Of a DNA stretch of 13,892 nt, positions 1 to 11,894 are shown piece after piece. The notes below the pieces were generated by a model that saw nothing but the letters and a program-made list of their open reading frames with translations, had not been told where the DNA came from and searched no databases. A program made the position numbers and the translations under genes. This DNA comes from Octopus sinensis (lineage: Eukaryota): positions 1 through 13,892 of the forward strand of contig NW_021825929.1 of NCBI RefSeq assembly GCF_006345805.1. The letters run 5' to 3'. Positions within the stretch are counted from its first letter, which is position 1. The number at the start of each line of letters is the position of its first letter.

Positions 1-89
1 TTACACTGCACACCGCAAAATGTGGGAGTGGTTAGGAATCTAAATCGAAGGGACAGACACTCACACAACTACAGTTTTATATATATAGA
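1..89 (-). mobile_element. 5' terminus of a small minus-strand Helitron family (continues left of window)
   Basis: Minus strand reads A|TCTATATATATAAAACTGTAGTTGTGTGAGTGTCTGTCCC from 89; near-identical to the 5' end at 3162 and related to the one at 2646. Confidence 0.7.
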
Positions 90-524
90 TATATTTCTCT
101 GTTATATTTTCTTTTTTAGTTTTGTTTTTGGCTTTTCACTGTTGATTTGCCTATTAGTGGTTTTTATCTCTAATTTAATTTATACAGATATATATCTCAT
201 TTGTATACATTTGTATATATAATGCGTGCACCACACCACACACATATATATATATACACTAATATATAATGTGTGCATTACGTAGTCGGTCGATTCAGCT
301 GAAAATATGCACACTATGTTTAAGGTGCTGACAAGTTTGCATGTCAACTATTTTGTTCCTCAAATGAAAGGCGTCACCTCGAGTACAAAATTCCTCATCT
401 TATAAAATGTGGCCCCAGTAGACCCGAATGAAATCGGGTTATATTAACCAAAATGTGAGAAGGGGTCTAAATGGGGCTGGAAGGGGATTAAAATTTCTAG
501 GAGTGGGTGTTTAGGAATTCTCTG

Positions 525-810
525 TTACATCAAGCTAAAAAATTTGCGCCAGCCTTTTAATCGTCAATGTGTTGCCGTCCATGATAAAGAAGTTTTGAAT
601 GCTTGCCATGGTGAGTCTACTGTCGTGAGAAAGAATCACTTCAAACTTGGTGTTTTACGAATTTTCTTTTACATCAAGTTCAAATTTTACGCCAGCCGTT
701 AAACTGTCACTACGTTGCTGTCCATCGTTAACAAATGCCAGCCATGGTGACTCTACTATCCTCAGATTCTATCCCTTCAAACTTTGGTTTCCAATATTTT
801 ATTATTTTTA
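525..810 (+). repeat. Degenerate two-copy 144-bp subrepeat inside the Helitron unit (also 3613-~3900)
   Basis: TTACATCAAG at 525 and 669 (3613 and 3757 in the other copy), each followed by related GCCAGCC, GTTGC, GCCATGGTGA-TCTACT and CTTCAAACTT motifs. Confidence 0.7.
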
Positions 811-1079
811 TTCAGCTCGCAAGTTCGTCTGTCCCTTTAAATGTTAGCGTTTTGCTATCTGCCTTGAAGCAGACCTTTCCATTGCCACTGCCTCATATTT
901 CTGATTGATCTTTCTAAATATTTTATTTCTCAACTTACTCAAGATCTTCTGTTGTTTATAAATGGGAGAGAGATAGATAAAGATAGAGAGTAAGAGAAAG
1001 CGAGGGAGAGTCCGAGAGAAAAGAAAAAGTAAGAGAGTGGGGAAAGTGAGAGAGAAAGGAGAGAGAAACAAATAGGAGA

Positions 1080-1384
1080 ATCATCATCATCATCATCATT
1101 TAACGTCCGTTTTCCGTGCTAGCACGGGTTGGGCAGTGTGACCGGGGTCTCGGAAGCCAGGAGGCTGCACCAGGCTCCAGTCTGATCTGGCATGTTTCTA
1201 CAGGTGGATGATCTTCCTAACGCCAACCACTCTGTGAGTGTAGTGAGTGCTTTTTTCGTGCCGCCGGCACTGGTGCCAGGGGGCTCGCAGTGGAAACAAT
1301 CGGTGGTGCTTTTTACGTGCCACCGGCACAGAACAAGTCAAGGCGGTGCTGCAATCGGCCACGTTCGGATGGTGCTTTACGTGC
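1080..1384 (-). mobile_element. 5'-truncated SINE-like retroposon with (GAT)n tail, nested in the Helitron unit
   Basis: Minus strand has three GCACG(T/A)AAA(AA)GCAC internal repeats, then GTGGTTGGCGTTAGGAAG and GGAAAACGGACGTTAAA, ending in a (GAT)6 tail (ATC x6 at 1080-1097). Matches my recollection of an abundant octopus SINE; no tRNA head present. Confidence 0.75.
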
Positions 1385-1856
1385 TGAAAGGAAGGAAGGA
1401 ACAGAAAGTAACACCCACACTCTTACCCGCGGTAGAGCGGGTCACTTCAGCTAGTCTCTATAATAAAAATGAATGCGTTTTTACCGCTTGGTCGCTTTCA
1501 ATGCCACTACATCCCGTCCGATTCGCTCCAAAATTTACAGGGACATGTAGAATGAGGTGACGATGCGCGTGGGCTACCTTAGAAATCCCTATCTAAAAGC
1601 TGTGGTTGCTAGGGGCCATCTTCCTACCCTCACCCTATTCCTCCTTTCCCTCTCTTACTCCTCTTCATAACTTTCAGAATGCCACTACGGTTATTTAAAT
1701 ATCTGTCACTATCGCTATTTCCTTTCTTTTTCACTGACTCTGTTTCCTACCTTCCTATCACTTCGCGGCGTTCTTTTAAGTATCTGTCTGTCACCAACAA
1801 CAAACACGAGATGATGAGAACAAATATTATGAATCAGATATTCTTGCGTTCATTTA

Positions 1857-2108
1857 TATGTGTGTGTGTGGTGTGTGGTGTGTTCTATATAAATATGTAT
1901 ATATAATGTATGTGTGTGTGTGGGTGTGTGTTCTATATATAAATAGTATATATATAATGTATGTGTGTGTGTGTATGTGTGTCTATATATAAATATGTAT
2001 ATATAATGTATGTGTGTGTGTGTGTTCTATATATAAATATGTATATATAATGTATGTGTGTGTGTGTGTGTGTTCTGTATATAAATATGTATATATAATG
2101 TATATATA
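1857..2108 (+). repeat. Compound minisatellite, 5 units of 44-50 bp: (TG)n-TCTATATATAAATATGTATATATAATGTA
   Basis: TCT(A/G)TAT anchors at 1884, 1932, 1982, 2026, 2074. Confidence 0.9.
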
Positions 2109-2249
2109 CAAAGTGCATATATCTGTATTTATGTATATTAAACTTTTTCATACTTTTTCATAGTTATATATATTTTTAAACAAATTATAAATATAATTTA
2201 ATATTTTTATTTTCAATTTAAATAATTTAAATTTTCATTTTATATTTTA

Positions 2250-2646
2250 CTAGCAGTATCGCCCGGCGTTGCCCGGGTTTGTAAGGGAAATAACTATATA
2301 AGCATTTTTAGTGAGTTATAGCAAAAAAATAGCAAAAAATGCATTAAAAATGGAATAAAAAATGATGGTAATTTTTTTTTTAATCGTTGACTCATCGTAG
2401 ACATTTTTAGAGAGTTACTTCCCTTATATAATAACGAAAAATGCATTAAAATGGAATAAAAATGATGGTAATTTTTTTTTTAAATGGTAGACTCATCGTA
2501 GACGCGCGCTAATACCCAGAAGGGCTCGATATGAATCACGACTATAAGATACCCGGTTTTGGTTACACTGCAACGCAAAATGTGGGAGTAGTTAGGAATC
2601 TAAATCGTAGGAGACAGACACACAACCTTACTTTTATATATAAAGA
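2250..2646 (-). mobile_element. Complete 397-bp non-autonomous Helitron nested in opposite orientation
   Basis: Minus 5' end TCTTTATATATAAAAG at 2646; 3' hairpin CCCGG/CCGGG (2262-2277), 8-nt spacer, CTAG (2253-2250). Sits between A(2249) and T(2647) with no TSD. Internal ~102-bp subrepeat (GCATTAAAA at 2341 and 2443). Confidence 0.85.
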
Positions 2647-2939
2647 TTTGTACAACTAAAACATTCGGTTGTGCAAATTGTTTGCACAGGAAACCTGCCC
2701 TGTGTGGCGGTTTTTGCCGTTTTTGTGGATCTGTTTCAGCTTTTTTAGCGATTTCTGTTTTGGCGACTTCAAGCCATGAAGTCGTTGTTCTAAAAGAACG
2801 CTGGTCTCCTTGACAACGCATTACGACGTTGATTTCCTTACACTCCCTTCACACACAGCTTCACGAGGGAGGGAAGAAGGGGGAGAAGCAACACAGGTGC
2901 AGGCGTGAGCGTGGACGCCAACTCCGCCGCCATCGACAC

Positions 2940-3162
2940 ACGAAAAAATATGCATTAAAATGGAATAAAAAATGATGTTAAATTATTTTAAATCGTAGAC
3001 TCATCGTAGACGCGCGCTAATACCCAGACGGGCTCGATATGAATCACGACTATAAGATACCCGAATTTGTTTAAACTGCACCGCAAAATTTGGGAGTAGT
3101 AGTTAGGAATCTAAATCGAAGGGGACAGACACTCACACCAACTACAGTTTTATATATATAGA
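2940..3162 (-). mobile_element. 5' half of a related minus-strand Helitron, lacking its own hairpin/CTAG
   Basis: Aligns to ~2434-2646; 5' A|TCTATATATATAAAAC at 3162. Similarity stops at ACGAAAAA (~2940). Confidence 0.75.
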
Positions 3163-4141
3163 TATATTTTCTATGTTATATTTTGTTTTTTTATGTTTTT
3201 GTTTTTGTTTTTCAATGTTTGATTTGCCTATAGTGGTTTTTATCTCTAATTTAATTTATACAGATATATATCTCATTTGTATACATTTGTATATATAATG
3301 CGTGCACACACACACACCACACACACACAATATATATATACACATATATATATATAATGTGTGCATTACGTAGTCGGTCGATTCACCTGAAAATATGCAC
3401 ACCTATGTTAAAGGTGCTGACAAGTTTGCATGACAACTATTTTTTCCTCAAATGAAAGGCGTCACCTCTAGGGCAAAATTCCTCATCTTATAAAATGTGG
3501 CCCCAGTAGACCCGAATGAAATCGGGTTATATTAACCAAAATGTGAAAAGGGGTCTAAATGGGGCTGGAAGGGGATTAAAATTTCAAGGAGCAGGTGTTT
3601 AGGAATTCTCTGTTACATCAAGCTAAAAAATTTGCGCCAGCCTTTTAATATTCAATGTGTTGCCGTCCATGATAAAGAAGTTTTGAATGCTTGCCATGGT
3701 GAGTCTACTGTCGTGAGAAAGAATCACTTCAAAAATTGGTGTTTACGAATTTTCTTTTACATCAAGTTCAAAATTTTACGCCAGCCGTTAAACTGTCACT
3801 ACGTTGCTGTCCGTCCGTTAACAAATGCCAGCCATGGTGACTCTACTATCCTCAGATTCTATCCCTTCAACTTTGGTTTCCAATATTTTATTATTTTTAT
3901 TCAGCTCGCAAGTTCGTCTGTCCCTTTTAAATGTTAGCGTTTTGCTGTCTGCCTTGAAGCAGACCTTTCCATTGCCACTGCCTCATATTTCTGATTGATC
4001 TTTCTAAATATTTTATTTCTCAACTTACTCAAGATCTTCTGTTGTTTATAAATGGGAGAGAGATAGATAAAGATAGAGAGTAAGAGAAAGCGAGGGAGAG
4101 TCCGAGAGAAAAGAAAAGTAAGAGAGCAACAAAGAGGGAGA

Positions 4142-4443
4142 ATCATCATCATCATCATCATCATCGTTTAACGTCCGTTTTCCGTGCTAGCACGGGTTGG
4201 GCAGTGTGACCGGGGTCTCGGAAGCCAGGAGACTGCACCAGGCTCCAGTCTGATCTGGCAGTGTTTCTACAGGTGGATGACCTTCCTAACGCCAACCACT
4301 CTGTGAGTGTAGTGGGTGCTTTTTTCGTGCCAGGGGGGCTCGCAGTGGAAACAATCGGTTGATGCTTTTTACGTGCCACCGGCACAGAACCAAGTCAAGG
4401 CGGTGCTGCAATCGGCCACGTTCGGATGGTGCTTTTTACGTGC
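4142..4443 (-). mobile_element. SINE-like retroposon with (GAT)8 tail, second copy at the same position in the Helitron unit
   Basis: Co-linear with 1080-1384 with a shared 5' truncation point (ACGTGC|TGAAAGG); ~15-bp deletion relative to copy 1; ATC x8 at 4142-4165. Confidence 0.75.
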
Positions 4444-4511
4444 TGAAAGGAAGCAACAGAAAGTAACAACCACACTCTTACCCACACGTAGAGCGGGTCA
4501 CCTTCAGCTAG

Positions 4512-4628
4512 TATATATATATATATATTGTATATATATATTATATATATATATATATATTATATATATATATATATATGTATGTATATATAGATATTAT
4601 ATATATATATATATATATATAATGTATG

Positions 4629-4662
<34 letters not shown>

Positions 4663-4798
4663 GTATATAAATATGTATGTATATAATATATTTATATATT
4701 AATATATATATATGTATATATATATATATGTAAATATATATATGTATATATATGTATATATATATATATGTAAATATATATGTATATATATGTATATG

Positions 4799-4858
<60 letters not shown>
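4512..4858. repeat. Long imperfect (TA)n microsatellite, ~350 bp
   Basis: Directly visible; begins at the T following the Helitron CTAG. Confidence 0.95.
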
Positions 4859-5603
4859 CAAACTAGCTATATGTTCTTTTGTGTGTGTGTGTGTGGACTG
4901 TGTGCATGTCTGTGTATCTCTATGTTGTGTGCCTGCATGCATTCTTTTGAGTTTGTGTGCATGCATATTATATACATATTTTTGGGCCGTTTTTTTTTTC
5001 TACTAGAAAATCTAACTGCCTTTTGGACACACTTTCCTATATACATCAGCAACGACTTTCTTACTGATAACACTTTCCCTGTATATTCCAAGTATGTAAT
5101 TATTTTTTCCCAAATAAATTGCACTTCATATTGGAAGCTCCAATGAAGCTTTTGGATGTTATCCAGGCACTCAATTAAGAGTCCACCGCATCTTATGGCA
5201 GAAACAGCTGTAAGCTAATGAAGTTCATAATGTAACCTTTATTTTCTTGTCTCATCTCTTTTTCTCATTACTGCTGTATACTCATTGGACACTTTGTTCT
5301 GAAACATACATATATTGAGTTCTACAACAAGTTATAAGTATCAAAATGCCTAAGCGAAATATTAAAAATATATATATATCATGTACTTATGTAGCTTTCT
5401 GCTTAAGGAATTGATGTTCATAATTTATTTTGACATATATGTTCTGATGTGTTTTTACTAAGTGACATCATCATCCAATTATTATTCAAATGTTAATTTC
5501 ATGGAGTAGGGTACACACTTTATAGGTTCCAGATAACACCATTCTTTCTCTTCTAATTCAAAACTTAAATCAGAAAAACTTGATAAAAATATGAGAAACT
5601 CAC

Positions 5604-5725
5604 CAATGAATAGCTTGTTCTAGTGACTTCTGATCTGTGTACTCTGACTGAACAAATTTATCCTTGTATATGCGGCCACATAAACATAACATATCAGATA
5701 CAGGTGGATTGCTTTGTTCAATTGC
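5604..5725 (-). CDS. MAP3K15: ASK-family MAP3K (ASK1/MAP3K5, MAP3K15-like), 4th exon in window: [40 protein letters not shown](W)
   Basis: Acceptor ttttttag|GCA, donor TG|gtgagt; 122 bp, phase 0 in, phase 2 out. [12 protein letters not shown] matches the ASK motif DMxCLxGRIYKD. Symbol is family-level; invertebrates typically have one ASK ortholog. Confidence 0.95.
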
Positions 5726-6485: not shown

Positions 6486-7278
6486 AAAGTAGATAAATCA
6501 TGGGAAATGTAAATGGAGGATTTATTTCCTACTTATGATTCAATCAATTGCTATAATAATTAAAAACTACTTTACTTCTACTTTTCTAATAACTAAGTTG
6601 CTTCTACTGAAATTAAGATCATCATTATCTATCAACTACAGCTTGTATTTACATCATGTACAAAGAGAGATGCACCACATATCACATTCTATTATCAGTG
6701 TCCTGGCTTCAGATGTTGCAAAGCCAGCCATCGGGGTTTTGATTGTGATTTTCAAAGGATGTCTTTAGTTCATCTTCTCATGGAGTGATTTTCAAATGAT
6801 GGTTTGGTTATTAGGTAACTCTCATATGAACTCTGGGTTTGCAGACAGTCTCTAACATGTTGCAGCCATCTTTAAGGTCTCTTAACTAGGAATGGTCATG
6901 TTATGCATCAAAAAAATATTGAAAGATATTCAGAGCATCCAGCAGGGCAAAAAGAAAGCAATATGGGACTGCTTATGGATCAAGTGAAAGTTTAACTCTC
7001 TAGTGAAGAATTGTTTCTATTGCTACAAAGATGCTTTACTTGACAGAACTTTGCAAGTAAGGCTATATAAGCATCCCAATATTTCTACCGTAGTCTGCCA
7101 TGAATGAAATTAGAATACAGCTTTATATAAATTTAGGAATTATATTTGATGAATGAAATACATAAAGTGAACAGACTATCAAACAAACAAGATTTCTAAT
7201 GGTAGTGAATACAGTTTAATATCATTAAAACCAAGTAAAAGAGTTGTAAGAAAAAAATAAACAGAAATATATACTAAC

Positions 7279-7327
7279 CTGTTGAATAACCTTCAAAGCT
7301 TTATCACTGTCGCCTTTTTTGTCACGT
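7279..7327 (-). CDS. MAP3K15: ASK-family MAP3K, 3rd exon in window (49 bp): (R)RDKKGDSDKALKVIQQ
   Basis: Acceptor tatatag|A, donor CAG|gttagt; phase 2 in, phase 0 out, exactly bridging the neighbouring exons. Matches ASK RRNxxGDRxKAL. Confidence 0.92.
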
Positions 7328-7559
7328 CTATATAATTCAGAAGAAAAGAAACAGGTATGTTTAGAAACACATAGACACCTAAGGAATTCTTTCAATTATA
7401 ACCTGATTGCATGAAAATTTTGCAGTGAAAATATTTAAATCATATATAAGTGTACAGGAAGCTATATGATTACGAAGTTTACTTCCCAACTACAGAGTTT
7501 CAGATTAGCTCCAATGGAGAGGGATCTTGAGTGATTTCTAGGATGGTTTTGACTGTGAG

Positions 7560-7719: not shown

Positions 7720-8223
7720 CCCTAAAGCCTATAGATTTACAAAAGAATCTGCTTCAGTACAGTACAGGCTAGGGCCACTGTTTGAAGAAAATGGCTTGCT
7801 TACTGCAGACTTCCAAAGGATAAGTGAATGTGCAATATGTAAGTGTTTTAACAAATCTGTTGGAACATTTACAAATAGCTATGGCTGATGAGTTCTAGAA
7901 ACTACAGCTCTATAGCTGGCAATTATTGATTGCATCAAAATAGAGGATCCTTAGCCTCACAGCCTTTGTGCATTTTTCCAGATAAAATTCCTAAAATCAT
8001 ATTTGTAAATGTATATATACACAAAGTACCTTTATTAACTGTTAGAATTTCTTCATATTAAGATTTATCTTCTATTTTCTATGTATATCATTTCTATGTA
8101 TACCATTTTGGTTATTCTACTTCTAACAACCCTACATTTACAAAATCACAAAACCAACATTTCTTTCTTGTCAATAGCTCCACATTAAATTGAAAGAAAG
8201 TTTATTTGATTACTGAAATATAC

Positions 8224-8330
8224 CTGTTTAATGCAAAAGCATAAAGATGTTGAATATTGGGCATATTTGTGATGCGATTCTTTGGGACATGTGCAAGATC
8301 TTCCACTAACTTCACCATTGCGTGGTAGTC
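8224..8330 (-). CDS. MAP3K15: ASK-family MAP3K, 2nd exon in window: DYHAMVKLVEDLAHVPKNRITNMPNIQHLYAFALN(R)
   Basis: Acceptor ttctctttgctag|GAC, donor AG|gtatat; 107 bp, phase 0 in, phase 2 out. Matches ASK DYDxxVKLVE...YAFALNR. Confidence 0.95.
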
Positions 8331-8856: not shown

Positions 8857-9900
8857 AATTTCTACAACTTCACCAGCCCCAATTTCTGGTCTCCTAATTC
8901 CTCTGATTGAAATCCCATGGATAACTATGCATAGGGTGCAGTTGAGAAAGACACCAACCGCTCTACAACACCAAGGATGAGCTAGTAACCAAGATCAAGT
9001 AGATGTTTGAAGATCTTCCCTGGAACACAATGGGGAATGCATGCACCAGGTTTTGGAGCCATGGTGGAAGATGAGGGCCACTACTTTGAATAAATTGTAT
9101 ATCTCAGCCTTAATCTAGTTGAAAATTTTTGATTTTTTTATAAATACTTTTATTTTTGGTAAGGATATTGTTTCTTTTCCTTTAATGCAAACTTCAACCA
9201 ACTCCTAAACCAGCCATCTACTGTTGACCAGGAAGCATTGCAGCAAATACCTCAGAAGCTTCTACTCAAAGACCTTGACCTGCTGCCTAATGTAAAAGAA
9301 ATCAAGACTGCCATAAAAGAAATGAACTGTGACAAAGCTCCAAGAGCAGATGGAATTTTTGCAGAGCTGTACAAGGCACTTGGTACCACGGCTTTCAGTG
9401 CATTCCATGACATCCTTGTATCCATTTGAAAGGAAGAGAGTATACCTGCAGACTTCCAAGACACTATCATAATTACACTCTACAAGAACATAGGGGCCAA
9501 GTCAAACTGCGGAAATTACATGGGCATTTCCCTGCTTTTTATTGCTGGGAAAATCCTGGTTTGCATCCTCTTTAACAGGCTCATCACCAGCATCTCTGAC
9601 AACAATTTGCCTGAAGCCCAGTGTAGCTTCCGCTCTGGTCGCAGCACCATAGACATGTTGTTTGCTGTGTGTCAAGTCATGGATTTGTACACTGTATTCA
9701 TAGACATGACCAAAGCTTTTGACACAGTCAACAGAGAAGCTTTGTGGAACATCCAAACTAAGCTGGGCTGTCCACACAAGTTCACCACATTAGTAAGACT
9801 TTTTCATGACAATATGACCAGTCAAGTTCTTTGCAATGGCGACTGCACCAACTCTTTCAACATTTCCAATGCAAACTTTAAATTTATCCCAAACACCCTG
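8857..9900 (+). mobile_element. 5'-truncated Tc1/mariner-superfamily DNA transposon remnant (transposase C-terminus 8857-9093 plus right TIR), interrupted by an RTE fragment
   Basis: Translation NFYNFTSPNFWSPNSSD*NPMDNYA*GAVEKDTNR, then YNTKDELVTKIK*MFEDLP..NACTRF and VEDEGHYFE* (TAA 9091-9093) shows the WPPNSPDxNPxD catalytic motif and GGxFE-type end. TIR-like AAATTTATCCCAAACACCCTG ends at 9900 (reverse complement starts CAGGGTG). No left TIR seen. Confidence 0.75.
9190..9871 (+). mobile_element. RTE-clade LINE internal fragment (N-terminal half of reverse transcriptase), pseudogenised
   Basis: One frame joining ORFs 9238 and 9520: NFNQLLNQP..KAPRADGIFAELYK..SI*KEESIPADFQD..NYMGISLL.IAGKIL..LPEAQCSFRSGRSTIDM..FIDMTKAFDTVNREALW..LGCPHKF..FHD. 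Single stop (TGA 9427-9429 at a conserved Trp) and an in-frame deletion of about 7-8 codons after VCQV. Confidence 0.92.
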
Positions 9901-10053
9901 CATTAATAAATTCCAACTCTGATAATGCATCAACATTTCAAATAACATATTCATAATCAATTGCTGACATTAATAAGACCGAGCTTAAAATGAGTGCAAA
10001 TTTCAACTTTTAACAAACCATAAATTTTGATAAAAGTAAATTCTAGAAGGATT

Positions 10054-10483
10054 GGCACAGGAGTGGCTGTGTGGTAAGTAGCTTGCTAACCAACCACATG
10101 GTTCCGGGTTCAGTCCCACAGTGTGGCATCTTGGGCAAGTGTCTTCTGCTATAGCCCCGGGCCGACCAATGCCTTGTGGGTGGATTTGGTAGACGGAAAC
10201 TGAAAGAAGCCTGTCATATATATGTATATATATATGTGTATGTATGTATGTGTTTGTGTGTCTGTGTTTGTGTGTCTGTGTTTGTCCCCCTAGCATTGCT
10301 TGATAACCGATGCTGATGTGTTTACGTCCCCGTCACTTAAAGTTCGGCAAAAGAGACCAATAAAATAAGTACTGGGCTTACAAAGAATAAGTCCTGGGGT
10401 CGATTTGCTCGACTAAAAGGCGGTGCTCCAGCATGGCCGCAGTCAAATGACTGAAACAAGTAAAAGAGAGAGTAAAGAGTAAG
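10054..10483 (+). mobile_element. Full-length tRNA-derived SINE (octopus-type, CORE-like segment) with internal (TA)/(TG) microsatellite
   Basis: A box TGGCTGTGTGG (10064-10074), B box GGTTCAGTCCC (10107-10117), CORE-like CTTGGGCAAGTGTCTT, 3' end GGCGGTGCTCCAGCATGGCCGCAGTCAAATGACTGAAAC plus an AGTAAAAGAG-type tail. Confidence 0.88.
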
Positions 10484-11047
10484 CTAAACAGAAAATATTG
10501 TGCTTTTCAATCACAATATACAATTGTCAAGACTTCATTTTCAATATTTGAATATATTGTTTCAACTGTAGTTATATATAGTAGTTATATAGGAAATTAA
10601 GGTGCTTGCTTAAATCTTTGCAAACGAAATTTGGAATCAGGTTTCTATTAACATATGACACAATGACATCAAGATTACCCTTGCTTTCACTATTTTCATG
10701 TGTTTATTTTTTGCTTACAGCATTCAAAATTTAGAAATCATCTCAAGTAGAATGCATTTAGTGCTTTGCATCAAGCATCTCATTACCTGATTGAAGATAT
10801 TGTAATGCTTTTACACAATGTTGAGACGACTGTGTGCCTATACCATCTTCTACACTCAGTTCTTCAGTTCCAATTTTTACCAAATTCACACAAATGATCT
10901 GACTCATAACTTTTGATAATTGGCTATATCAGAACGTAATGATATAAGAAACTGACCCTTTTAGTAATTATCAATTTCTCTTGGGAACAACTGATTACAG
11001 TATCACAGATGCTATACAGAAACTTTTCATATGACTGTAATATTCGT

Positions 11048-11108
11048 TTTCTTTTATTCTTTTCCTTGTTTCAGTCATTTCACTGTGGCCATGCTGGAGC
11101 ACCACCTT
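11048..11108 (-). mobile_element. 3'-terminal fragment of the same SINE family, inverted
   Basis: TTGTTTCAGTCATTTCACTGTGGCCATGCTGGAGCACCACCTT is the reverse complement of ~10418-10460 with few mismatches; pyrimidine-rich tail to its left. Confidence 0.8.
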
Positions 11109-11801
11109 GAAAAATATCAGTGCTGATTAAAAGAAAAAAAATTATTCTTTTCTTCTTTTTTAAATCATGAGTGTTCATAAGTTTTCCCACTCTTGCTGCT
11201 GCAGCAAAGCCTTGGTGGAAGTTCATTTCTATTGGTAATTGGTGATGCCATTGTTTTGTATTAAGTTTATCCTTGCAAAACTGAAGTCCTTCATTGCTTT
11301 TTTTTTTCATCTCTTTTCGATAGGAAAGAAAGTAGTGACCATGACCATTTGCAGGGACTCCAAGATTGGTGGAAAAGGAGGATGGTCTGAATGTTTGCAA
11401 TGGAAAATGCAAACAACTCCACTAAAAGCATCTGAGGACTAGAATATGATATCAAACTGAGCAGCAGATTAATGATTAATGGACTAAATAACCAACCTCC
11501 AATATTAAACTAGTAGCCTCCTTACATAATTTTGTTGAGCATGTAAAATGCATGCAATGGCTCAACAATATTACCATAACAACGATAATATAAAACTTGT
11601 AAAAATTGCAAGACAATAGTAAATCTAAACTTCACTATTTAATCATTTGTACTCCAGACACTACATTCACTGTTTTGATTAGCAAGGCCTCCCTTTATAT
11701 CAAATTTTAAAATTTACACAAAAAAGTATTTCGAATTCTGAAGTGATTTCAAAGCAATTTTAAATGATAATATAAAAAAAAAAACATAAAATCTCTCAAA
11801 C

Positions 11802-11894
11802 CTGGATATCTCGATAAGATATCAACATATTCCAAATAATTTCTGGTGATAAAAGCTGGGGATCATCTAGGCGCATCTGAAAACTATGCAATGC
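11802..11894 (-). CDS. MAP3K15: ASK-family MAP3K, 1st exon in window: ALHSFQMRLDDPQLLSPEIIWNMLISYRDIQ
   Basis: Acceptor ttttattcgtctag|GCA, donor CAG|gtttga; 93 bp, phase 0/0. Matches ASK R(L/V)DxxxxLxxDIxxNLLLSYRDIQ and joins in frame to the DYH exon. Confidence 0.95.

What the first reader, a model, noticed from the sequence alone, without database searches (positions are those of the whole stretch)
1..4511. Head-to-tail ~3.06-kb Helitron concatemer with an exact CTAG|TC junction
What looks like a segmental duplication has breakpoints exactly at Helitron termini. A hairpin plus CTAG ends at 1454, the next base starts a TC 5' end (1455), and that unit ends at the homologous CTAG (4511), so period equals unit length (3057). 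A 3'-to-5' end joint is the junction expected of Helitron circular or rolling-circle intermediates (established), so this may be an integrated concatemer or the seed of a Helitron-derived macrosatellite (inference). Alternative: a sibling copy inserted at the A|T formed by the older copy's 5' junction, which gives the same joint. The copies differ by ~3% by eye, many as homopolymer indels.
Basis: partly seen in the sequence, partly recalled or inferred. Interest (0 to 1): 0.78.

Follow-up and report, generated by a model that had tools for sequence, protein, structure and literature searches.

The report
Head-to-tail pair of Helitron transposons
Two neighbouring copies of a 3-kb non-coding Helitron transposon are joined exactly end-to-start inside an intron of an animal kinase gene; such joints are already known from bats, maize and flies, so this is a tidy but ordinary example.

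Summary
Window 1-1454 is a diverged copy of 3071-4511 (97.4% identical at aligned bases, 40 indels). Homology stops at CTAG in both copies (1454 and 4511). Base 1455 starts TCTCTATAATAAAA. The outer copy is followed by T and 347 bp of (TA)n.

Nested in the unit on the minus strand is a complete 397-bp canonical Helitron (2646 to 2250, a|TC...hairpin...CTAG|t). It has the same 5' motif and the same 3' geometry: a 6-nt loop, with the hairpin ending 12 nt from the terminus. The 5' motif occurs only at the four predicted 5' ends in the window (0.005 expected).

The unit is non-autonomous (no Pfam domain in six frames) and composite. Its nested elements are shared by both copies, so they predate the doubling.

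Three things remain unshown:
- whether the left copy is full length, because the window cuts it;
- whether the joint came from a rolling-circle multimer or from a sibling inserting at the resident's A|TC site.

The outer 3' hairpin is degraded, and the indel:substitution ratio (40:36) suggests a noisy assembly. Head-to-tail Helitron junctions are already published for Myotis, maize and Drosophila. Verdict: real, a new member of a known kind, modest interest.

The parts
1..1454 (+). Left Helitron copy. Only its 3' 1.45 kb is visible because the window start cuts it. It is homologous to 3071-4511.
   Evidence: 1371 matches, 36 mismatches, 40 indel events.
1425..1454 (+). 3' terminus of the left copy: hairpin ACCCGC-GGTAGA-GCGGGT (1425-1442), 8-nt spacer, CTAG (1451-1454).
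   Evidence: -6.7 kcal/mol, matched by 4 of 200 shuffles; a composite 3'-end site.
1451..1470 (+). Head-to-tail joint CTAG|TCTCTATAATAAAAAT with no intervening base; the break lies between 1454 and 1455.
   Evidence: The motif occurs only at predicted 5' ends.
1455..4511 (+). Complete 3057-bp unit: a non-autonomous composite Helitron with 5' TC, 3' CTAG and no coding capacity.
   Evidence: no Pfam domain in six frames; no terminal inverted repeats; the termini.
4480..4511 (+). 3' terminus of the right copy: degraded hairpin (CCCACACGTAGAGCGGG), spacer, CTAG (4508-4511).
   Evidence: -1.8 kcal/mol, matched by 100-138 of 200 shuffles; the differences cluster at 1429-1431.
4512..4858 (.). 3' flank: T, then a (TA)n microsatellite. 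This is the presumed A|T target context.
   Evidence: period 2, 178 copies..
2250..2646 (-). Nested complete 397-bp canonical Helitron on the opposite strand: a|TCTTTATATATAAAAG ... CCCGG-GCAACG-CCGGG + 8 nt + CTAG|t.
   Evidence: Flanking A (complement of 2647) and T (complement of 2249).
2647..3162 (-). Second minus-strand Helitron 5' end (a|TCTATATATATAAAAC at 3162). Its first ~217 nt are 87% identical to the 397-bp element. The next 299 nt are unrelated and lack a CTRR end, and they abut the next a|TC.
   Evidence: 2437-2647 vs 2946-3163, 87%.
1..89 (-). The same nested minus-strand 5' end in the left copy, at the same insertion point. The nested insertion therefore predates the doubling.
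   Evidence: 1-90 matches 3071-3163 better than 2563-2647 (83%).
1079..1400 (-). Nested retroposon-like segment ending in a (TGA)n tail on the minus strand, seen as (ATC)n on plus. Its homologue in the right copy is at about 4141-4440. Read by eye; the boundaries are approximate.
   Evidence: sequence shared by both copies. The classification is an inference and was not tested.
1858..2103 (.). 48-bp (TG)n/(TA)n minisatellite inside the unit.
   Evidence: 5.1 copies, 87% matches.

Best explanation
The region is a same-orientation, head-to-tail pair of a 3.06-kb non-autonomous canonical (HLE1-type) Helitron. It lies in an intron of an ASK1/MAP3K5-like gene of an animal genome that looks cephalopod-like. 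The 3' CTAG of the left copy is ligated directly to the 5' TC of the right copy. The array ends in CTAG|T within a (TA)n tract.

Shown: the duplication, the exact joint, the terminal features, the absence of coding capacity, and the fact that both copies share nested older elements. The composite was therefore doubled as a unit.

Inferred mechanism: a RepHel transposase supplied in trans nicked at the TC and displaced one strand. On a circular or tandem template it failed to terminate at the first hairpin-CTAG. It ran a second time round, and a dimer or longer multimer was integrated at one A|T site in a single event. The two units have since diverged by about 2.6% in substitutions. That is roughly 3-4 My at the rate implied by PMC13282606, and less if part of the difference is assembly noise.

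I put about 0.7 on 'Helitron pair joined by Helitron transposition machinery' and about 0.4 on the single-event multimer route specifically.
For: Duplication and boundaries.

Inner 3' end: hairpin, 8-nt spacer and CTAG. Composite 3'-end sites are rare, 3 in 27,784 positions.

5' motif: TCTNTATA(TA)ATAAAA occurs only at 1455(+), 2646(-), 3162(-) and 89(-), against 0.005 expected. The 5' end of the large unit resembles the 5' ends of the independent small Helitron; only 5-6 of 2000 shuffles reach that score.

The small element is a textbook a|TC...hairpin...CTAG|t with the same 6-nt loop and the same 12-nt distance to the terminus.

Other Helitron features: no terminal inverted repeats, a T flank within (TA)n, and no protein domain, so the unit is non-autonomous.

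Literature: Helitron hallmarks, and circles with a precise TC/CTAG joint that are competent for transposition (PMC4778049). Head-to-tail junctions and tandem arrays in plants and bats are taken as footprints of rolling-circle transposition (PMC5876387). Tandem Helitron-1_DPe is reported on the D. pseudoobscura Y chromosome. Octopus vulgaris carries recently active Helitron families (PMC13282606).
Against: Only 1.48 units are visible, and the 5' 1.6 kb of the left copy is off-window. No other genomic copy could be retrieved, so the boundaries rest on two adjacent copies.

TC and CTRR signals alone are notorious for false positives (PMC11417382).

The two families' 3' ends are not significantly similar in sequence; 186 of 2000 shuffles reach the score.

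A read-through model would predict a weak inner terminator. Here the inner hairpin is intact and the outer one is degraded, although decay after insertion could explain that.

The joint cannot distinguish a multimer from a sequential insertion (PMC2267711).

The indel:substitution ratio of 40:36 and the transition:transversion ratio of 15:21 look like a noisy consensus. The divergence and age estimates are therefore soft.
Confidence: 0.4

Rival explanations
1. Two separate transposition events. [quoted passage not shown] That is the very site the transposase nicks to start transposition. The result is the same CTAG|TC joint.
For: This model was proposed for the maize head-to-tail pair, where PCR across inbred lines supported two independent insertions (PMC2267711). 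The inner 3' hairpin, which would belong to the younger copy, is intact, and the outer one, belonging to the older copy, is degraded. The 2.6% substitution difference plus several multi-base indels is compatible with two different donors. The left copy need not be full length.
Against: The maize pair consisted of dissimilar elements, whereas these two are 97.4% alike over 1.45 kb and share the same nested insertions. Hitting one specific A|T needs a targeting preference that has not been demonstrated. Nothing in the window discriminates between the models.
Confidence: 0.3
2. A transposase-independent tandem segmental duplication (replication slippage or unequal exchange). It would be either of a resident single Helitron, or of ordinary DNA whose breakpoints only look like Helitron ends.
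For: The period equals the unit length by construction, for any tandem duplication. The unit start (TCTCTATA) and the 3' flank (TATATATA) share a 1-nt microhomology and A+T-rich similarity. TC and CTRR signals are common in genomes.
Against: Both breakpoints would have to fall exactly on a hairpin-CTAG|T site and on a rare 5' motif. Their frequencies are about 1e-4 and less than 1e-5 per position. Unequal exchange between flanking (TA)n tracts would leave (TA)n at the joint, and none is there.
Confidence: 0.1
3. Assembly artefact. A repeat-induced loop or a haplotype mis-join in a noisy long-read assembly created a false second copy.
For: There are more indel events than substitutions (40 vs 36). 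Twenty-six of the indels are single-base and most lie outside long homopolymers, and transversions exceed transitions. This pattern is more typical of consensus error than of neutral decay. Repeat ends are where assembly graphs form cycles.
Against: The copies are separated by 1.6 kb of unique unit sequence, so they are not simply abutting. The copies also differ by multi-base indels of 12 and about 14 nt at short direct repeats, which look biological. A CTAG|TC joint must exist in some read for it to be assembled.
Confidence: 0.08

Closest known systems
[quoted passage not shown]
   Same: A perfect CTAG|TC joint with no host A between two copies of the same non-autonomous canonical Helitron. 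It was interpreted as a rolling-circle footprint.
   Different: The host here is a cephalopod-like invertebrate. Only 1.48 units are seen. The unit is a 3-kb composite carrying older nested Helitrons and a retroposon. Family-wide data are lacking.
[quoted passage not shown] 2008, PMC2267711)
   Same: The same G/T joint (CTAG followed by TC), and the same two competing models.
   Different: The maize neighbours are dissimilar elements carrying different gene fragments, and PCR across inbred lines supported two independent insertions there. Here the neighbours are 97.4% alike and collinear.
Helraiser/Helibat1 circles (Grabundzija et al. 2016, PMC4778049; 2018, PMC5876387)
   Same: A precise junction of 5' TC to CTAG 3', and a palindrome about 11-12 nt upstream of the 3' end that acts as the terminator. 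From memory and untested here, the Helraiser left end also begins with a closely similar TC..TATA..ATAAAA motif.
   Different: Those joints are on episomal circles made in cell culture. This one is chromosomal and a few million years old. No transposase gene is present.
Tandem Helitron-1_DPe clusters on the Drosophila pseudoobscura large Y chromosome (bioRxiv 10.1101/2021.06.02.446622)
   Same: Tandem head-to-tail junctions that can be found with a chimeric query made of the last 50 bp fused to the first 50 bp.
   Different: Those are megabase-scale heterochromatic accumulations. This is a two-copy intronic locus.
IS91 one-ended transposition giving tandem multimers (bacterial HUH transposon; background knowledge, cited in PMC4778049)
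   Same: Failure to terminate at the 3' end yields multimeric insertions.
   Different: That system is prokaryotic and plasmid-based. It is a mechanistic analogy only.

Membership tests
Canonical Helitron (HLE1) | 5' terminus TC | tested here: met
   The unit defined by the homology boundary starts TCTCTATAATAAAA at 1455. Its first 7 nt fit the maize HelitronFinder 5' consensus TC[TC][CA]TA[CT].
Canonical Helitron (HLE1) | 3' terminus CTRR | tested here: met
   CTAG at 1451-1454 and at 4508-4511. Homology between the copies stops there.
Canonical Helitron (HLE1) | Short GC-rich hairpin about 10-15 nt upstream of the 3' end | tested here: met
   Inner copy: 6-bp stem, 6-nt loop, ending 12 nt from the terminus, -6.7 kcal/mol, matched by 4 of 200 shuffles. 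The outer copy's hairpin is degraded (-1.8 kcal/mol), so the feature is met in one of the two copies.
Canonical Helitron (HLE1) | Insertion between host A and T without a target-site duplication | tested here: inconclusive
   The 3' flank is T within (TA)n (4512 onward). The 5' flank of the array is off-window, and no empty site is available.
Canonical Helitron (HLE1) | No terminal inverted repeats | tested here: met
   The 5' 30 nt against the reverse complement of the 3' 30 nt scores 1, and 1765 of 2000 shuffles reach that score.
Canonical Helitron (HLE1) | Multiple dispersed copies with the same two boundaries | not testable with these tools
   The source genome is absent from the reachable collections: no ORF hits; best host-gene hit 62% identical; metagenomes: nothing, or a chance 23-mer in a bacterial contig; nothing.
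Canonical Helitron (HLE1) | RepHel transposase, or termini shared with an autonomous partner | tested here: inconclusive
   No Pfam domain in any of the six frames of 1455-4511, so the unit is non-autonomous at best. No partner could be searched for. A related 5' motif is shared with the nested 397-bp element.
Helitron2/Helentron (HLE2) | 12-18 nt terminal inverted repeats and T|T insertion | tested here: not met
   No terminal inverted repeats. The terminus is CTAG|T, not a T|T site with inverted repeats (definition).
Tandem (head-to-tail) Helitron array | 3' CTRR joined directly to 5' TC with no host base between | tested here: met
   CAGCTAG|TCTCTATAAT at 1448-1464.
Tandem (head-to-tail) Helitron array | Neighbouring units are collinear copies of one family over their full length | tested here: inconclusive
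   The visible 1.45 kb is collinear at 97.4% and includes the shared nested insertion point. The remaining 1.6 kb of the left unit is outside the window.
Rolling-circle multimer (single integration event) | Units are each other's closest relatives and share private changes; three or more units, or no single-copy allele | not testable with these tools
   This needs the family's other copies, the upstream sequence and orthologous loci.

The most novel reading that the evidence does not exclude
The locus is the right-hand end of an integrated rolling-circle multimer with two or more full units continuing leftwards. The unit would be a composite Helitron that was mobilised with its load of older nested transposons. 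That would make it a direct chromosomal footprint of multimeric Helitron transposition in a mollusc, and a young 3-kb macrosatellite seed inside a gene intron.
Probability: 0.3. Interest if true: 0.45.

Novelty: new member of a known kind. Interest (0 to 1): 0.3.

Why it matters
If confirmed genome-wide, the locus adds a lophotrochozoan example to the few lineages where head-to-tail Helitron joints are documented (bats, maize, Drosophila).

It also offers a clean case for asking whether such joints arise by terminator read-through or by insertion at a resident 5' nick site. The unit's nested elements and the two unequal 3' hairpins are useful markers for that test.

In practice it is a caution for repeat annotation. 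A 3-kb 'segmental duplication' here is really a transposon pair, and the unit is a mosaic of at least three transposon families. None of this changes current understanding of Helitron biology.

Tried and rejected
1. Extending the window or finding other copies.
- The exact-protein look-up of the junction-spanning ORF 1192-1560 found nothing on record.
- The homology search with that ORF gave no hits.
- A query built from the host-gene exons gave best hits of only 62% identity, so the source genome is not in the protein or contig collection and the gene locus could not be fetched.
- The metagenome scan with the 3' end gave 0 hits.
- The metagenome scan with the 5' 23-mer gave one hit, L001. On reading it is a bacterial contig (dihydrouridine-synthase-like and rsmE-like genes, identified by eye) with no homology beyond the 23-mer. 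It is a chance match.
- Scans of genome contigs and viral contigs with internal segments of the large and small elements gave 0 hits.

2. Coding content. Translations of all six frames of 1455-4511 have no Pfam match, so there is no RepHel remnant and no recognisable captured gene.

3. Structured RNA. There are no Rfam families and no tRNAs in the window.

4. A minus-strand reading of the array. The minus-strand 5' ends at 89 and 3162 are preceded by ATATA, not CTAG, and no hairpin-CTRR precedes them. The tandem phase is therefore a plus-strand feature.

5. Unequal exchange between flanking (TA)n tracts. Rejected because no (TA)n sits at the joint.

6. Sequence similarity of the 3' ends between the large and small elements. 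Not significant. Only the architecture is shared.

7. Pritham & Feschotte 2007 could not be read and is cited second-hand.
Full report

Yes. Self-BLAST aligns window 1-1462 with 3071-4519. A global alignment of 1-1454 against 3071-4511 gives 1371 matches, 36 mismatches and 81 gap columns in 40 events. Aligned bases are therefore 97.4% identical, and identity is about 92% when gaps are counted.

Just 12 of the 40 indels sit in homopolymer runs of 3 or more.

Homology ends at CTAG in both copies (1451-1454 and 4508-4511). The next base is T in both. After that the sequences are unrelated: TCTCTATAATAAAAATGAATGCG at 1455, against a 347-bp (TA)n tract from 4512.

The spacing of 3057 bp equals the length of 1455-4511 by construction. 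What carries information is the kind of sequence sitting at the two breakpoints.

The window start cuts the left copy, so only 1.48 units can be seen.

**2. Are the breakpoints Helitron ends?**

The inner 3' end has these features:
- a 6-bp GC-rich stem (1425-1430 paired with 1437-1442) with a 6-nt loop;
- an 8-nt spacer followed by CTAG;
- a fold of -6.7 kcal/mol, which only 4 of 200 shuffles match.

This fits the published hallmarks: 5' TC, 3' CTRR, a palindrome 10-15 nt upstream of the 3' end, and A and T flanks (PMC2267711; PMC4778049; PMC11417382).

I scanned the window for the combination of CTRR, a following T and a hairpin with a stem of at least 5 bp lying 5-15 nt upstream. It occurs 3 times in 27,784 strand positions. 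One is at 1454. One is a presumably fortuitous site at 9638, inside a reverse-transcriptase fragment. The third is on the minus strand, ending at 2250.

That third site turned out to be the 3' end of a complete 397-bp canonical Helitron nested in the unit on the opposite strand. It reads a|TCTTTATATATAAAAG ... CCCGG-GCAACG-CCGGG-CGATACTG-CTAG|t, running from 2646 down to 2250. It has the same 6-nt loop and the same 12-nt distance from hairpin to terminus as the large unit.

A second minus-strand 5' end of the same family sits at 3162, and its homologue in the left copy sits at 89.

The motif TCTNTATA(TA)ATAAAA occurs exactly four times in the window: at 1455(+), 2646(-), 3162(-) and 89(-). Dinucleotide shuffles give 0.005. 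The motif was defined after seeing the sites, so the number is indicative only.

The 5' end of the large unit aligns with the small elements' 5' ends at a score reached by only 5-6 of 2000 shuffles. The two families' 3' ends share architecture but not significant sequence similarity (186 of 2000). Neither element has terminal inverted repeats.

The Helitron reading therefore rests on more than TC and CTAG. This genome region carries an independent, textbook Helitron with the same style of termini.

The caveat remains that terminal signals alone give many false positives. No dispersed copy of the large unit could be examined.

**3. Anatomy of the unit (1455-4511)**

- It has no protein domain in any frame, so it is non-autonomous.
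- 1455-1857: unique 5' region.
- 1858-2249: a 48-bp (TG)n/(TA)n minisatellite followed by A+T-rich DNA.
- 2250-2646 (minus strand): the 397-bp Helitron.
- 2647-3162 (minus strand): a second 5' end of that family followed by 299 nt of unrelated sequence. It lacks a recognisable 3' end and abuts the first element's a|TC.
- 3163-4140: A+T-rich sequence containing two degenerate repeats of about 140 bp.
- About 4141-4440: a segment that reads on the minus strand as a retroposon 3' part with a (TGA)n tail. This is a by-eye inference.
- The last ~70 nt: the Helitron 3' end.

The nested 5' end and the retroposon-like segment occur at the same places in both copies. The composite therefore existed before it was doubled.

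The two small-family 5' segments are 87% identical, whereas the two large copies are 97.4% identical. A repeat survey of Octopus vulgaris equates a Jukes-Cantor distance of 0.09 with about 25 My (PMC13282606). At that rate the doubling is roughly 3-4 My old, and the small-element insertions are several-fold older. This is rough. The window's species is not established by any tool; I infer a cephalopod from repeat sequences I recognise from memory.

**4. Context**

The array lies between exons of a minus-strand gene. The concatenated exon translations (about 11799-11894, 8205-8330, about 7270-7330 and 5603-5725) match the Pfam MAP3K_TRAF_bd domain at 1e-52. They also hit proteins named mitogen-activated protein kinase kinase kinase 5.

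The array is therefore intronic, or at least flanked on the right by exons, in an ASK1-like gene.

**5. Mechanism**

The joint CTAG|TC is what Helraiser produces on its circular intermediates, which can themselves transpose. Genomic head-to-tail joints and tandem arrays have been read as rolling-circle footprints in bats and plants and on a Drosophila Y chromosome.

Two transposase-based routes give the same joint:
- (a) one event, in which replication passes the first hairpin-CTAG terminator and integrates a dimer or multimer;
- (b) two events, in which a sibling integrates at the host-A|T(C) of the resident's 5' junction. This was discussed for maize, where PCR data supported independent insertions of two dissimilar elements.

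The high similarity, the collinearity and the shared nested insertions fit (a), but also fit (b) if the family is young.

The inner hairpin is intact and the outer one is degraded by a small cluster of changes at 1429-1431. This is the reverse of what a weak-terminator read-through would predict, and it fits (b) slightly better. A single decay event after insertion would explain it equally well.

My split is 0.4 for (a), 0.3 for (b), 0.1 for a transposase-independent duplication, 0.08 for an assembly artefact, and the remainder for other explanations.

The transposase-independent duplication would need both breakpoints to land on rare motifs. Unequal exchange between (TA)n tracts would also leave (TA)n at the joint, and none is there.

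The artefact is kept alive by an odd mutation spectrum: 40 indel events against 36 substitutions, and 15 transitions against 21 transversions. That looks like long-read consensus noise. Against it, several indels are multi-base deletions between short direct repeats, which look biological.

**6. Comparison and novelty**

By the features testable here, the element qualifies as a canonical HLE1-type non-autonomous Helitron, and it fails the HLE2/Helentron definition.

The defining population-level features could not be tested, because the source genome was unreachable. Those features are dispersed copies with the same ends, empty sites and an autonomous partner.

Head-to-tail Helitron pairs and arrays are published, so this is a new member of a known kind. 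Interest is modest (0.3).

The most novel reading still open is that this is the visible end of a longer integrated multimer. It would be settled at once by reading 1.6-5 kb to the left of the window.

Noticed in passing
window 2250-2646 (- strand): A complete 397-bp canonical non-autonomous Helitron nested in the large unit: a|TC...GC hairpin-8 nt-CTAG|t. It contains an internal ~100-bp direct repeat (2303-2402 vs 2402-2503, 84%).
   Followed up: yes
window 2647-3162 (- strand); homologue of its 5' end at 1-89: A second 5' end of the same small family, followed by 299 nt of unrelated sequence. That sequence has an 8-bp-stem hairpin but no CTRR end, and it directly abuts the next element's a|TC. 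The result is two left ends in direct repeat, reminiscent of the double-LTS elements mentioned for Xenopus in PMC11417382. It could be a 3'-truncated copy, a chimaera or an end-bypass product.
   Followed up: partly
window 5603-5725, ~7270-7330, 8205-8330, 11799-11894 (- strand): Exons of an ASK1/MAP3K5-like kinase gene (Pfam MAP3K_TRAF_bd 1e-52, TPR-S 5e-21). The best database relatives are only 53-62% identical, so the source species is not in the protein collection.
   Followed up: partly
window 9208-9900 (+ strand): A decayed non-LTR retrotransposon reverse-transcriptase fragment (Pfam RVT_1, 3e-10) with an in-frame stop.
   Followed up: partly
window ~10046-10460 (+ strand), with a possible inverted fragment at ~11040-11110: A SINE-like repeat with an internal (TA)n/(TG)n tract, which I recognise from memory as a common octopus SINE. 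ARAGORN and Rfam report nothing there.
   Followed up: no
window 1079-1400 and ~4141-4440: A segment that on the minus strand ends ...GGAAAACGGACGTTAAA(TGA)n, like a retroposon 3' end with a microsatellite tail. It has three internal ~60-bp sub-repeats (GTGCTTTTTACGTGCC.CCGGCAC) and is nested in both copies.
   Followed up: no
window 1-1454 vs 3071-4511: An unusual difference spectrum between the copies: 40 indel events against 36 substitutions, 26 of the indels single-base and mostly outside long homopolymers, and 15 transitions against 21 transversions. This suggests consensus noise in the assembly over this repeat.
   Followed up: partly
L001 1409-1431: The 23-nt 5'-end query hit one JGI metagenome contig. 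It is bacterial and shares nothing beyond the 23-mer, so it is a chance match.
   Followed up: yes
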